A stretch of 64,000 nucleotides of DNA from positions 21,266,001 through 21,330,000 of the forward strand of contig OZ365110.1 in NCBI GenBank assembly GCA_977030845.1, read 5' to 3'. A program made the position numbers and the translations under genes. Source of the DNA: Fimbriosthenelais zetlandica. Its lineage: Eukaryota. The notes under the pieces are model-generated. The model did not search any database. It had not been told where the DNA came from and saw nothing but the letters and a program-made list of their open reading frames with translations. Shown in pieces: positions 4,830 to 8,619 of this stretch; the first letter of the stretch is position 1, and each line of letters begins with the position of its first letter.

Positions 4830-4835
4830 TTTATT
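4830..4835 (-). terminator. Polyadenylation signal of the ubiquitin-fold/CaaX gene
   Basis: AATAAA on the minus strand ~23 nt after the TAA at 4858-4860. Confidence 0.55.
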
Positions 4836-4857: not shown

Positions 4858-7695
4858 TTACATCAAGAAACATCCAGTCCCAGTCTTGATATCAGTGAGA
4901 TCATCCAGCAAGGTGGTGTCGAAGTTCTCATGTCTGTTGAAAATATTACGAAAATAAAAGCAAATATTACGACAGGCCTAGAGGTATTCATCAACGTTCC
5001 AAATTATTATTTCCATAATAAGAAAAAAAAACTAAACATACTGTGGTATCAATGTGATGCTTAAGGTTCGGTGAAATCTTGGGTCTGACTCTATTGCATC
5101 CACTTCAATAAGTTGTTGGTCAGTCCGAGCCTTCAATACCGTGCCACCTCTTTTCACACCTTGATCAGCTGGGTCCTTTTTAGGTAATAACTCATTACTA
5201 CCTGTTGGAAAAGGGACATTTTATTTTGCTCGTTTTTTTTTAATGATTTTAGACTTATTATATGAATCAACCGGTATTCATTGATGTACCATTGATTAAT
5301 GAAACGCATTTGGTATGCATTAAAAATTCAGGTCTACATGCAGAGTGTGCAGAAAACTTACAAACTGTTTCTTCATCATCGACAGCAATCGGTGGCTGAA
5401 TTTTGATATTTCCGTCATTTTGAGGCAGATATCCTTAAAATAAAGACATGAAAATCTATGAAATTGTTTTCCCATGGTGTTCTTTAAAATGATATTAGGC
5501 CTATAATTATATCATTCTTTAGAAATTTCTATAAATTCATATAGGTTAACTAATGCTATGTAATTAAAGGGGTATACTCACTTATAAGAATATCGATAGT
5601 ATCCCTTGGTCGGATACCATAGTGGGATACAGACTTCCCCATATCTAATGGTGTTCCACAGAAGAGCCAACTGGGGCTTTGGCCACTCGGCCCTCCGCGA
5701 GAAGCCAGTTGAAGCTGTAATTCCCTGAAATTTGTAAAGGTTACGGCGTGACTCTTAATTTCACTCCACGATTTCAGTTTTCTGTTTATTGTGGATAGGT
5801 GTTTGAAAATAATGCTCATGAAAGACTCGTACCTTATGGTGGTATCACTCACAGCTTCCAATTCATGCATTTTTCCATCCAAGACTCTAACAAATATGTC
5901 AAATAACCCTCCAGGTTTTTTCTTCTGGACCTTAATTCCCATTGTTGGAAGGTTAAGTAGAATTTCATCTTTGTGTAGCAGCAACAAGACGCTATCATTC
6001 TCCTTAAGAAATATTAATATTATTTTTATTTTTTCATATATTATTTTCATTTGGTGTATGTAAATAAGCCTACAGCAATGCAACTATTCATAGCAGGGGC
6101 GGATCCGGAATTTTGCAACTGGGCAAATGTACGAAATATTTTGCGAAAACACTTACAACAATCCAATCAGTAGAGCCCAGATATCTGCCAACAGAACTGA
6201 GAAAGTAAAGATCCTCCCCCTCACTGAGTTCTTGTCCACCAACTGCGAAGTCATTCTTATAACTATCGATGACGTCATGGAAAGTTGGAAGGCCATTAAC
6301 ATCAAGAACAACTTCATTCCCTTCATCGTCATTCAGTACCAATTTATCTATCTTCACAAGTGTCATTTTCCTTATTGGTTCGTTTTTCTTGGCAGATTCA
6401 CTGAATAATAATTATAGAAATGAGATATAAAACAAATATAAAATAGGGGAGAATATTGTACTCTGAAGATGCCGTATTTCATAAAATTATAGACGTTCAA
6501 TGAATATTTCTCAAATTACTTTTCTTAACTATAATTTTGATGACCATTATTCCCAAAATAAATATTCACTTGTAACTTTACCTGAGTGTCATGTCTGAAT
6601 CTAATTTCATCACTATTTCTGTAGTGCTGTCATATTCAGGATTTGTCCAATGCACCAAACTACATCCAACATCTAGTACCCAGTCGCCAAAGTCAGTTGA
6701 GAGTTTTCTAAACAGGTCACAAGCCTTTGAGGACAATGGCATTTCATACCTATGCCCTTTGTTTGTATTAAATGCGCTGACATCAAACTGAAAATTAAAA
6801 TAGTAAAAATTAGATCTAATAAACGCAACCAGAGGAGTTTGCAGTCTGTTCCCGCCATAACACTCGATATAAGGGATCAATATATCAATAGAATTAAGAA
6901 TGCAAGGTCAGAGAAACAGGCTAATACATTCTAATTAGGTCTGTGAAGAGTAGGTCATAAAACAGCCATTGTCAAATATCCTTATTTGAATCCATTCGAG
7001 ATTAATTTTCAATAGAAAACTGTCCTATTTGGCATACCTGCATGGTGCTCGATCCTAGTTCAGGCTGGAAGCAGAGTTTGATGATAGAACGCTTAGAAAG
7101 CTGGGCTTCCACCTTTGTCATACTACTTGGCGAGGAAGGTTTACTTTTTTCATTGTTGGATTTTACATTTGGATTTTCTTGCTCTTCGGTTGCAGAAAAC
7201 ATGAATCCTATCCGCCTATCGACTGGTCTTTCCAGCACACATACACTCCTCCCATGCAGGAGAAATTTCCCTGAAACATTTAGTACATCAAAAAGATGTT
7301 TGGAATATTATCTCGGAATTGAAATACGATAATATGCCATTAAAATGACACAGGTACTTCAATCATTATTCTATGCGTGGACTAAGAATAAACCTTATTT
7401 CAGGATTACATTCGGAATTCCACATGCAGCTTAACTTACCAATGAAAGCTCCATCAATTTCAATCCTGACCATCGCCAGGAAGGGGTTGGAATTGGTGAT
7501 TCTCAATGTAAAACGCGTGTCTTTTTCCATGTATGTGAGCGCCTCGCTAGGACAGGTGAGCGTGTGTTCCTGCCCAAGAATCTCAGCTCCAAAACCATCC
7601 ACTGTGAGCGGTACGGGAGACAGGAGATCGGAAGTGAGATAATTATCATCATAATTAGGTGTAACAGGTCGTGAGGACGGGCCTGCCTTAGCCAT
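4858..7695 (-). CDS. ~495-aa protein: uncharacterised N-terminal domain, tandem ubiquitin/SUMO-like folds, C-terminal GGT-motif segment and CaaX box (CFLM)
   Basis: Exons 7440-7695, 7038-7270, 6582-6787, 6157-6400, 5833-6002, 5582-5724, 5042-5201, 4858-4933; all GT-AG, phases consistent, 1488 nt, no internal stop. Clear Ubl: FDIFVRVLDGKMHELEAVSDTTIRELQLQLASRGGPSGQSPSWLFCGTPLDMGKSVSHYGIRPRDTIDIL. Ends ...KTGTGCFLM*. AATAAA (minus strand) at 4830-4835. Confidence 0.82.
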
Positions 7696-8619
7696 ATACC
7701 TGTAGGTTTGAAAATATCAATATTTGTATGTGTATTGTAAGGCAAAATGAATAGGCCTACCGTAAAGTCTAATATACATTTGTACAATAATGATTTATAT
7801 TAATCCTATAAGAAAATTATGCATTATGCATTTTTCAGTGCATTACCTGCTATATAAGGCCTAAAATAGGCAATGTGTAACTGTAACTGTAACTGACGTA
7901 TATACTATACCGTACTACAATATTATGTGAACAAGAGTGAAACAAACTATATTCCTTTCAACAAATCAACTCGTTATGAGCTGAAAATTAAATATATCCA
8001 CTCACTACCAAAACATAAGCTCACGTACAATTATATCAGGAATCTATTATTTTACCTGTCGCTGTGGGGAGGAATTTTTGATGCCATCACACTGATTCAA
8101 ATGTTATACATCCAGGGACCGCTTGCAATAATGATCTGTGATGTGGTGTTAAAAATGTAGGCCTACATTTTTTTGATAGTGTTATCTCAATGTGAACCCG
8201 TGTCCGCAGAATTGTCCAATGCATGTGTATGCCTAATATTGTTTTATGGAGAACAATTTTGAGGTAGGCCTACTGGTATGCGCACATGCAAGATTCCGGT
8301 TGAAGATTGAATAGAGTGTAGGTTCACTCCTCTGCCATGTCGCCTACCTGTTATGCTTGCCTGTTAGCGTATCGTGTCGATATTCTAGATCTACGCCTCA
8401 CTCTGTGTTAACAGGTGTAGGCCTATTCCTAGAAGAGGAAGCAGGTATTCCAGTAATTGAATGCTCTGAATATTACAATCATCTTAATGTTACATGACAG
8501 AGGTGGACCCAGAATTTTGTATAAAAAAAGGGGCGGGGGATGAGGTTATAGGCCTAAATAGTTAGCCTAAACCTGCCCTGAAAAAGGCCACCGTCAACAG
8601 GCCGAAATGCATAGGGCTA

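What the first reader, a model, noticed from the sequence alone, without database searches (positions are those of the whole stretch)
4858..6787. Prenylatable protein carrying an in-line chain of ubiquitin- and SUMO-like folds
Seen: once spliced by hand, the gene encodes three consecutive ~75-90 aa blocks. Block 1 (FDVSAFNTNKGHRYEMPLSSKACDLFRKLSTDFG..LDSDMTLSES) is a divergent Ubl-like pattern. Block 2 (LVLNDDEGNEVVLDVNGLPTFHDVIDSYKND..LYFLSSVGRYLG..ENDSVLLL) is SUMO/Rad60-like. Block 3 is a clear ubiquitin-like domain. None ends in a cleavable di-Gly, and two further exons end the protein in CFLM. Known: CaaX with X=Met is a prenylation signal, and UBL3/MUB proteins are single Ubl folds anchored this way. 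Inference: a membrane-tethered scaffold mimicking a mixed Ub/SUMO chain (decoy or adaptor for DUBs, SIM/UBD readers or the proteasome), an architecture I do not recognise. The ORF track misses the last two exons.
Basis: partly seen in the sequence, partly recalled or inferred. Interest (0 to 1): 0.85.

Follow-up and report, generated by a model that had tools for sequence, protein, structure and literature searches.

The report
Lipid-anchored protein with three ubiquitin-like folds
This is a real, conserved invertebrate gene for a 495-residue protein that joins an unclassified front domain, three ubiquitin-shaped modules (one certain, two predicted) and a conserved tail signal for a lipid membrane anchor, a build not seen in named families but whose function is untested.

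Summary
On the minus strand, six GT-AG exons (6787-4858) read in frame and end in CFLM-stop. These encode a conserved N-terminal domain, giving an 8-exon, 495-aa model.

No RNA run could be listed, so support for the model is comparative. A 4.3-Mb eukaryotic contig (L004) carries an orthologue with the same eight exons, the same phases and near-identical exon lengths. It ends in CHIM-stop. Two further organisms (L005, L006) share the front exons.

- **Block 3:** a true ubiquitin-family domain. The orthologous unsplit exon scores PF00240 32.1 bits against a cut-off of 25.4.
- **Block 1:** predicted as a beta-grasp (pLDDT 74.6). An unbiased search of 48,161 PDB chains returns almost only ubiquitin-like folds, at a modest Z of about 5.
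- **Block 2:** only a low-confidence model (pLDDT 57.6), with beta-grasp strand order and Ub/SUMO/PB1 matches at Z 3.5-4.5.

Neither block 1 nor block 2 shows any sequence similarity to ubiquitin or SUMO. The 'SUMO-like' label and the 'mixed Ub/SUMO chain decoy' idea are therefore unsupported.

The most likely reading is a farnesyl-anchored, non-conjugatable multi-beta-grasp adaptor from a small, unnamed, lineage-restricted family. It resembles UBL3/MUB in principle but is not a member. This same stretch was also noted elsewhere in the scan (s1-191804).

The parts
7440..7695 (-). Exon 1: proposed start codon (7695-7693), variable N-terminal stretch, and first half of the conserved N-terminal domain (G-[YF]-G..E..G..H ... 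N.N ... D..IG).
   Evidence: Donor gtaagt at 7439. 15 exon-sized relatives in 1.84 billion representatives, best 47% identity, E 2.7e-15. Aligned in A7. Caveat: the ATG sits directly after an acceptor-like cag, and the L004 counterpart starts at that acceptor without an ATG, so an upstream coding exon is possible.
7038..7270 (-). Exon 2: second half of the N-terminal domain (LLH..S.C.LERP.DR..GF.F), a variable low-complexity loop, and a conserved F-[QK]-PE.G strand.
   Evidence: tttcag acceptor, gtatgc donor, phase 1 in and phase 0 out. tblastn matches in L002, L004, L005, L006, L007, L008 and L009.
6582..6787 (-). Exon 3: block 1 (strands 1-4 and the helix of a predicted beta-grasp), with the invariant motif C.L[VI]HWT[NT].EYDS..E.V and DFG.
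   Evidence: 206 nt in the window, L004 and L005. 40-44% identity to the window's copy in four other organisms (A6). AF2 pLDDT 74.6 with order b-b-a-b-b. Fold matches.
6157..6400 (-). Exon 4: first about 17 codons (conserved RKM[TS]LV) are the probable last strand of block 1. From 6345 downwards it encodes block 2 (strands 1-4 and helix).
   Evidence: Conserved in L004 (48%) and L006 (30%) (A5). AF2 pLDDT 57.6 with order b-b-a-b-b starting at residue 19. Matches to Ub residues 1-53, SUMO1, PB1, PI3K ABD at Z 3.5-4.5.
5833..6002 (-). Exon 5: probable last strand of block 2 (DSVLLLL), the conserved linker LHKDE.L, and from about 5906 the first strand pair of the ubiquitin-family block 3.
   Evidence: 170 nt in both the window and L004, 56% identity. 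Aligns with ubiquitin residues 2-23.
5582..5724 (-). Exon 6: rest of block 3 (ubiquitin residues 35-70 equivalent). Ends ..DILIS with no Gly-Gly.
   Evidence: 143 nt in both the window and L004, 67% identity. Pfam ubiquitin and Rad60-SLD weak on the half-domain. The fused orthologous exon in L006 passes PF00240 (32.1 bits against 25.4). Alignment to ubiquitin.
5042..5201 (-). Exon 7: tail with a conserved element (KR.GT.L..R..QQ.IEVD.IE.D.RF) of unknown fold.
   Evidence: caacag acceptor, gtatgt donor. 39% identity to L004 exon 7, tblastn 2e-8, same phases. No Pfam hit.
4858..4933 (-). Exon 8: acidic flexible tail ..DDL..[KR]TGTG, then the CaaX box CFLM (codons 4872-4861) and stop TAA (4860-4858).
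   Evidence: Same-phase exon in L004 ending CHIM-stop. Rank-1 match of 1355 segments. No TM segment or signal peptide in either orthologue.
4830..4835 (-). AATAAA polyadenylation-signal-like hexamer 23 nt after the stop.
   Evidence: Read directly from the sequence. Function not tested.

Best explanation
The gene encodes a cytosolic, non-conjugatable, multi-domain protein from a small unnamed family of aquatic eukaryotes. Its parts, in order, are: a conserved beta-rich N-terminal domain; two divergent beta-grasp modules joined almost head to tail; a linker; a genuine ubiquitin-family domain that keeps hydrophobic residues at the L8/I44/V70 patch positions but lacks K48, K63 and the Gly-Gly end; an acidic tail; and a CaaX box with X = Met. 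Most likely the Cys is farnesylated, followed by the usual -aaX cleavage and methylation. The lipid would hold the protein on cytoplasmic membrane faces, where its ubiquitin-like surfaces recruit partners. This is an adaptor role analogous to UBL3/MUB, which tethers E2 enzymes. Shown here: the gene structure, its conservation, the ubiquitin-family identity of block 3, the absence of di-Gly, and the conserved CaaX. Inferred: the beta-grasp fold of blocks 1 and 2 (predicted models only), prenylation itself, membrane location, and the adaptor role.
For: The 8-exon model is in frame. The L004 orthologue has the same exon count, identical phases and near-identical exon lengths (e3 206/206, e4 244/241, e5 170/170, e6 143/143, e8 76/76 nt), is intact, and ends CHIM. 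L005 and L006 share e1-e3 and e1-e6 respectively. Block 3: PF00240 32.1 bits, above the cut-off, in L006; ubiquitin monomers at E about 1e-6; window alignment gives L8->L, I44->L, V70->L, K48->T, K63->P. Block 1: pLDDT 74.6; a Foldseek-independent search of 48,161 chains gives a top 50 almost entirely of ubiquitin, Rad60 SLD2, FERM F1, UBL, ISG15 and MoaD folds, with 54-62 of 68 residues aligned at rmsd about 2.5-3.6. Block 2: b-b-a-b-b order, and all geometrically sensible matches are Ub/SUMO/PB1/UBX. CaaX: conserved, rare by chance, on a protein with no hydrophobic segment (maximum KD19 1.41) and a small, flexible, acidic run before the Cys. Precedent: MUB/UBL3 are Ub-fold proteins without Gly-Gly that are prenylated at a CaaX box and tether E2s to the plasma membrane (PMC4996978; PMC1847700).
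Against: No transcript evidence could be obtained. Blocks 1 and 2 have no Pfam hit in any species and no profile similarity to block 3 (hhalign probability below 1%). Their structural Z-scores (5.4 and 4.5 at best) fall in the range the tool itself calls common. The block 2 model is low confidence. Both blocks were folded without their presumed last strand, because that strand lies in the next exon. The tail is acidic and, near the CaaX, has no polybasic run or second lipidation Cys, so membrane binding by farnesyl alone would be weak. A conserved C-terminal Cys can serve other purposes (PMC1847700 lists such cases). The CaaX is seen in only two species. The function of the N-terminal domain and the exon-7 element is unknown.
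Confidence: 0.55

Rival explanations
1. One reading: the three blocks imitate a mixed ubiquitin/SUMO chain, so the membrane-tethered protein acts as a decoy or bait for DUBs, SIM/UBD readers or the proteasome.
For: Three in-line beta-grasp-like modules with very short spacing between blocks 1 and 2. Block 3 keeps the hydrophobic patch positions of ubiquitin.
Against: Block 2 has no SUMO/Rad60-SLD signal in three species, and its fold matches are generic (PB1, PI3K ABD, Ub, UBX, SUMO1 all at Z 3.5-4.5). Blocks 1 and 2 share no detectable sequence with ubiquitin. Block 1's invariant surface motif (HWT[NT].EYDS) is unlike ubiquitin or SUMO, which points to its own specific partner rather than mimicry.
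Confidence: 0.1
2. A soluble UBL-domain protein that is not prenylated in vivo. The ubiquitin-family domain docks it to the proteasome or to another UBL receptor (RAD23/Ddi1/BAG6 style), and the terminal Cys is conserved for another reason.
For: Block 1's best Swiss-Prot and PDB matches include the Ddi1, RAD23 and Dsk2 UBL domains. The tail is acidic with no polybasic second signal. PMC1847700 documents CaaX-like ends that are not used.
Against: Cys at -4 and Met at the last position are both conserved between orthologues only about 45% identical overall, while the two middle residues differ (FL against HI). That is the pattern expected for a functional CaaX box. The protein has no signal peptide or TM segment that would hide the C-terminus from cytosolic prenyltransferases.
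Confidence: 0.2
3. Blocks 1 and 2 are not independent ubiquitin-like domains. They are parts of a family-specific fold, possibly an insertion within a host domain formed by exons 1-2 and exon 7 (the 'split host domain' reading of note s1-191804), and only block 3 is a Ubl.
For: No sequence evidence ties blocks 1-2 to any Ubl family. The block 2 model is low confidence. Z-scores are modest. Exon 7 holds a conserved element of unknown fold after the Ubl. L002 and L009 show exons 1-2 but no blocks within 10 kb.
Against: Both independent models give the b-b-a-b-b order of a beta-grasp, and the unbiased search for block 1 returns almost only beta-grasp proteins. The conserved hydrophobic strands at the start of exons 4 and 5 sit exactly where each block's missing fifth strand should be. 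In L002 and L009 the introns are full of transposon ORFs, so the absence of blocks within 10 kb is uninformative.
Confidence: 0.15

Closest known systems
UBL3 / MUB (membrane-anchored ubiquitin-fold protein)
   Same: A ubiquitin-fold protein with no C-terminal Gly-Gly, hence not a conjugated modifier, and with a conserved C-terminal CaaX box that would lipid-anchor it to membranes (PMC4996978, PMC1847700).
   Different: MUBs are single-domain proteins of about 120 aa. This protein has 495 aa: an extra N-terminal domain, two further predicted beta-grasp modules, and about 75 residues between the Ubl and the CaaX. Block 3 matches PF00240/PF11976 only. No other ubiquitin-like model, including the one I recall as holding UBL3/MUB, appeared at E up to 10. 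The E2-binding lap-bar loop was not testable here.
Tandem-UBL proteins (USP7 HUBL, ISG15, FAT10, OASL, Rad60/NIP45 SLD1-SLD2, TUG)
   Same: Several beta-grasp domains in line in one polypeptide. Structural matches of blocks 1 and 2 include ISG15, OASL di-Ubl, Rad60 SLD2, FAT10 and USP4 UBL.
   Different: From my own knowledge, none of these is prenylated, and ISG15 and FAT10 end in Gly-Gly and are conjugated. Blocks 1 and 2 here have no detectable sequence relationship to any of them.
FERM F1 / talin-kindlin F0-F1 / Ras-association type beta-grasp modules
   Same: The highest Z and TM matches of block 1 are merlin, ezrin and radixin F1 lobes, talin F0, kindlin F0/F1 and Shank3 SPN. These are membrane-proximal beta-grasp modules that bind partners rather than being conjugated.
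   Different: There are no F2/F3 lobes and no sequence similarity. The matches are modest (Z about 5) and no better than those to ubiquitin itself.

Membership tests
Ubiquitin family (Pfam PF00240), block 3 | Score above Pfam's gathering threshold on the domain | tested here: met
   The L006 orthologous exon, not split by an intron, scores 32.1 bits against a cut-off of 25.4, E 9.6e-8, covering profile positions 2-68 of 72. The window's copy, read through its stop-free 108-nt intron, scores 20.2 bits, E 4.9e-4, and aligns with ubiquitin residues 2-23 and 35-70.
Conjugatable ubiquitin-like modifiers (Ub, SUMO, NEDD8, ISG15, FAT10) | Exposed or cleavable C-terminal Gly-Gly (or Gly) at the end of the beta-grasp | tested here: not met
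   Blocks end ..TLVKID..VLLLLHKDE and ..DILISS. All four Gly-Gly pairs lie in internal loops or linkers.
UBL3 / MUB | C-terminal CaaX box and absence of Gly-Gly | tested here: met
   CFLM in the window and CHIM in the L004 orthologue; no terminal Gly-Gly.
UBL3 / MUB | Single Ub-fold protein of about 120 aa whose sequence belongs to the MUB family | tested here: not met
   495 aa with at least four other regions. Pfam scans at E up to 10 list only PF00240 and PF11976 for block 3. Size and definition from PMC4996978.
UBL3 / MUB | E2 backside binding with a lap-bar loop | not testable with these tools
   Needs binding assays or a complex structure.
SUMO / Rad60 SUMO-like domain (PF11976), block 2 | Sequence match to the SLD/SUMO profile | tested here: not met
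   No Pfam hit for exon 4 in the window, L004 or L006 at E up to 10. hhalign against block 3 gives probability 0.1%. SUMO1 appears only among many generic beta-grasp matches at Z 3.5-3.8.
Beta-grasp (ubiquitin-like) fold, block 1 | b-b-a-b-b(-b) topology superposable on ubiquitin-like structures | tested here: met
   AF2 pLDDT 74.6, pTM 0.58, elements b2-5, b10-13, a22-33, b44-46, b58-60. Z 5.0-5.4, rmsd about 2.5 over 54-59 residues. The unbiased top 50 is almost all beta-grasp. Caveats: predicted model, modest Z, and the fifth strand was not included.
Beta-grasp (ubiquitin-like) fold, block 2 | b-b-a-b-b(-b) topology superposable on ubiquitin-like structures | tested here: inconclusive
   The order b19-23, b29-33, a40-50, b65-67, b73-76 fits, but pLDDT is 57.6 and pTM 0.41 from only three sequences. 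Foldseek E is at least 0.66. Z is at most 4.5.
CaaX prenylation substrates (farnesyltransferase) | Cys at position -4, Met at the last position, and a C-terminus accessible in the cytosol | tested here: met
   CFLM and CHIM. No signal peptide or TM segment; small flexible TGTG run before the Cys. That X = Met favours farnesylation rests on established knowledge of CaaX specificity, not on a test here.
CaaX prenylation substrates (farnesyltransferase) | Actual attachment of a prenyl group | not testable with these tools
   Needs an in-vitro or in-cell prenylation assay; no predictor such as PrePS was available.
DUF7918 (PF25534), N-terminal domain | Match to the Pfam profile | tested here: not met
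   It appeared only as a weak Atlas lead (score 0.74). There was no Pfam hit for exons 1 or 2, for eight relatives, or for any of the 15 aligned members at E up to 10.

The most novel reading that the evidence does not exclude
A farnesyl-anchored, uncleavable 'pseudo-chain' of three ubiquitin-like folds is read at membranes by receptors or enzymes of the ubiquitin system. It would act either as a constitutive chain mimic or as an E2/DUB regulator, in a multi-domain elaboration of the UBL3/MUB principle. Its previously undescribed N-terminal domain would supply target specificity.
Probability: 0.12. Interest if true: 0.75.

Novelty: new variant of a known kind. Interest (0 to 1): 0.5.

Why it matters
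As far as I know, UBL3/MUB is the only well-studied class of ubiquitin-fold protein held on membranes by a prenyl group, and it regulates E2 enzymes and protein sorting. A second, unrelated family combining a ubiquitin-family domain with a conserved CaaX box would show that lipid-anchoring a non-conjugatable ubiquitin fold has arisen more than once. It would also provide a multi-domain version to compare with MUB. The family further carries an unclassified, fairly widespread N-terminal domain and an invariant motif in block 1 (HWT[NT].EYDS); both are starting points for finding partners. The limits are plain: everything beyond gene structure and block 3 is prediction, the family looks restricted to a few aquatic eukaryotes, and no function is known.

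Tried and rejected
- **Transcript evidence:** two searches for sequencing runs (RNA, then any kind) listed nothing, so read laying could not be used.
- **Full-length folding or searching:** not done. The spliced protein has no reference, and the tools do not accept read-through of stops. All work was done exon by exon.
- **Large protein collection:** exon 4 alone found nothing. A two-species exon-4 profile found only L004's own exon. The exon-3 profile found one more organism (P0021).
- **ESM Atlas:** exons 1, 4 and 3 gave low recognition and no credible lead.
- **DUF7918 for the N-terminal domain:** rejected. The exon-1 profile against PDB sequences gave nothing significant.
- **'Giant virus' recollection of note s1-191804:** two scans of the viral collection, with exon-1 and exon-3 profiles, found no relative. 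A broader exon-1 alignment was too diverse to search with.
- **Bacterial and archaeal genomes:** only two pattern-sized chance matches of 14-19 residues.
- **Spurious representatives:** P0004, P0006, P0011 and P0016 from the representative search are repeats or retroelement proteins.
- **Paralogues:** none in the window.
- **Synteny:** no conserved sequence upstream or downstream between the window and L004.
- **L002 and L009:** exons 1-2 but nothing further within 10 kb. Their introns are full of transposon ORFs, so this says nothing about their architecture.
- **Profile-profile comparison among the three blocks:** no similarity.
Full report
**Gene model.** The finding lies in a eukaryotic (invertebrate) gene on the minus strand. 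They join into 999 nt in a single frame, giving 332 aa that end CFLM followed by TAA.

Two upstream exons, 7695-7440 (with an ATG at 7695) and 7270-7038, join in phase. The full model has eight exons, 1488 nt and 495 aa. An AATAAA hexamer lies 23 nt after the stop.

One caveat concerns the 5' end. The ATG follows an acceptor-like 'cag', and the orthologous exon in L004 begins at that acceptor without an ATG. A further upstream coding exon is therefore possible.

**Is the model real?** No public sequencing run could be listed for this stretch, as RNA or otherwise, so the evidence is comparative.

An exhaustive phmmer search with exon 1 against 1.84 billion representatives gave 15 true hits. All were exon-sized ORFs from eukaryotic contigs, and the best was 47% identical.

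One hit lies on a 4.3-Mb contig (L004). tblastn and manual splice-site reading recover an orthologue there with the same eight exons, identical phases and near-identical lengths:

| Exon | Window (nt) | L004 (nt) |
|---|---|---|
| e3 | 206 | 206 |
| e4 | 244 | 241 |
| e5 | 170 | 170 |
| e6 | 143 | 143 |
| e8 | 76 | 76 |

Per-exon identity is 36-67%. The L004 frame is intact and ends ...TGTGSGCHIM-stop, against ...TGTGCFLM-stop in the window.

The window's last 25 residues find that L004 exon as the best of 1355 six-frame segments (score 42, next best 32). Only 4 of those 1355 segments end C-x-x-M-stop.

L005 shares exons 1-3 before its contig ends. L006, found by a metagenome scan with the exon-3 profile, shares exons 1-4 and has exons 5 and 6 fused into one. 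P0021 is exon 3 of a fifth organism. The terminal CaaX exons are therefore conserved coding sequence and not a splicing fantasy.

**Block 3.** This is a bona fide ubiquitin-family domain.
- The uninterrupted L006 exon scores 32.1 bits on PF00240, against a gathering cut-off of 25.4 (E 9.6e-8).
- The same exon matches ubiquitin monomers in the PDB at E about 1e-6.
- In the window the domain is split by a 108-nt intron that happens to be in frame and free of stops. Read through it, the domain scores 20.2 bits.
- It aligns with ubiquitin residues 2-23 and 35-70. The alignment gives L8->L, I44->L, V70->L, H68->D, K48->T and K63->P.
- The domain ends ..DILISS, without Gly-Gly.

**Block 1 (exon 3).** It has no Pfam, PDB-sequence or Atlas match, and hhalign finds no similarity to block 3.

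A five-species alignment (A6) gave an AlphaFold model of moderate confidence (pLDDT 74.6, pTM 0.58), with elements in the order strand-strand-helix-strand-strand.
- Foldseek's PDB matches are weak in E-value but almost all beta-grasp: Ddi1 UBL, merlin/ezrin F1, ubiquitin, ISG15, NEDD8, BAT3.
- The second aligner gives Z 5.0-5.4 over 54-59 of 68 residues at rmsd about 2.5 Å, against ubiquitin residues 3-56.
- A search that does not depend on Foldseek, over 48,161 chains, returns a top 50 made up almost entirely of ubiquitin-like folds.
- Swiss-Prot models agree.

The tool warns that Z below 8 can reflect a common arrangement. The support here comes from the uniformity of the matches, not from the score.

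The missing fifth strand is probably the conserved RKM[TS]LV at the start of exon 4. Block 1 also carries an invariant motif, C.L[VI]HWT[NT].EYDS..E.V, in the strand-3-to-strand-4 region. This motif has no counterpart in ubiquitin and probably marks a specific binding site (inference).

**Block 2 (exon 4 from residue 19, plus DSVLLLL of exon 5).** It is found only in the window, L004 (48%) and L006 (30%).

The three-sequence model is of low confidence (pLDDT 57.6, pTM 0.41), but it again shows strand-strand-helix-strand-strand. Every match with sensible geometry is ubiquitin, SUMO, PB1, PI3K ABD, kindlin or UBX: TM about 0.47 in Foldseek, Z 3.5-4.5 in the second aligner, with model residues 18-80 against ubiquitin residues 1-53.

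Nothing singles out SUMO. No PF11976 hit occurs in three species, and hhalign against block 3 is null. Block 2 as a beta-grasp is plausible but not established, and 'SUMO-like' is unsupported.

A weak alignment of the helices of blocks 1 and 2 (..DLF..L..DFG.. against ..DVI..Y..DFA.., E 0.13) hints that the two may be duplicates.

**Other regions.** The N-terminal domain (exons 1-2) is the most widely conserved part, with relatives on contigs from at least a dozen samples. It matches no Pfam family. The Atlas lead DUF7918 failed in every test. No relative was found in the viral collection or in bacterial and archaeal genomes.

Exon 7 holds a conserved element of unknown fold.

**The C-terminus.** Neither orthologue has a hydrophobic segment long enough for a signal peptide or TM helix (maximum 19-residue hydropathy 1.41). 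The 30-residue tail is acidic (net -4 and -6), with a small flexible TGTG run before the Cys.

Cys at -4 and Met at the end are conserved while the two middle residues differ. This is the pattern of a working CaaX box. By established CaaX rules, X = Met points to farnesyltransferase. With no polybasic stretch and no nearby second Cys in the window's copy, farnesyl alone would give weak or endomembrane association (inference).

It is not a member of that family. It is four times longer, has extra domains, and its Ubl matches only the general ubiquitin and Rad60-SLD profiles. Tandem beta-grasp proteins are well known (USP7, ISG15, FAT10, OASL, Rad60), but to my knowledge none carries a CaaX box. 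A full-text search for tandem ubiquitin-like domains together with farnesylation found no paper.

**Verdict.** I rate this a new variant of a known kind, of moderate interest. Confidence by claim:

| Claim | Confidence |
|---|---|
| Gene model | about 0.9 |
| Block 3 is ubiquitin family | about 0.97 |
| Block 1 is a beta-grasp | about 0.75 |
| Block 2 is a beta-grasp | about 0.6 |
| Prenylated in vivo | about 0.65 |

Noticed in passing
window 5725-5832 (minus strand): Intron 5, which splits the ubiquitin-family domain, is 108 nt, in frame and free of stops. Retaining it would insert 36 residues into the Ubl without breaking the frame, and this is why the mechanical ORF 5556-6083 reads straight through. 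In L006 the same two exons are fused with no intron.
   Followed up: partly
window 7696-7705 and L004 10180-10190: The window's proposed start codon sits right after an acceptor-like 'cag|GTATATGG'. L004 has the homologous 'cag|GTACACGG' with no ATG in that exon, so at least L004, and possibly this gene, has an upstream coding exon. tblastx of the upstream regions found nothing conserved.
   Followed up: partly
window 6700-6720 and 6250-6290 (blocks 1 and 2 helices): The helices of blocks 1 and 2 align weakly (..DLF..L..DFG.. against ..DVI..Y..DFA.., hhalign E 0.13), hinting that the two blocks arose by internal duplication.
   Followed up: partly
L002 1-2600 and 11100-20276; L009 11000-17000: The family members on L002 and L009 have exons 1-2 followed by long stretches full of retroelement ORFs (RT, RNase H) and simple repeats. 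Whether they carry the Ubl blocks could not be decided.
   Followed up: partly
L012 10001-10042, L013 10001-10057: Two bacterial contigs (Lunatimonas lonarensis; a Zixiibacteriota MAG) matched the HWT..EYD search pattern over only 14-19 residues. I take these to be chance matches selected by the pattern.
   Followed up: no
L010, L011 (GCA_022702835.1, GCA_022702875.1): An identical exon-1 ORF (P0005) occurs in two NCBI genome assemblies on short contigs. These accessions could reveal which animals carry the family, but the organisms were not identified here.
   Followed up: no
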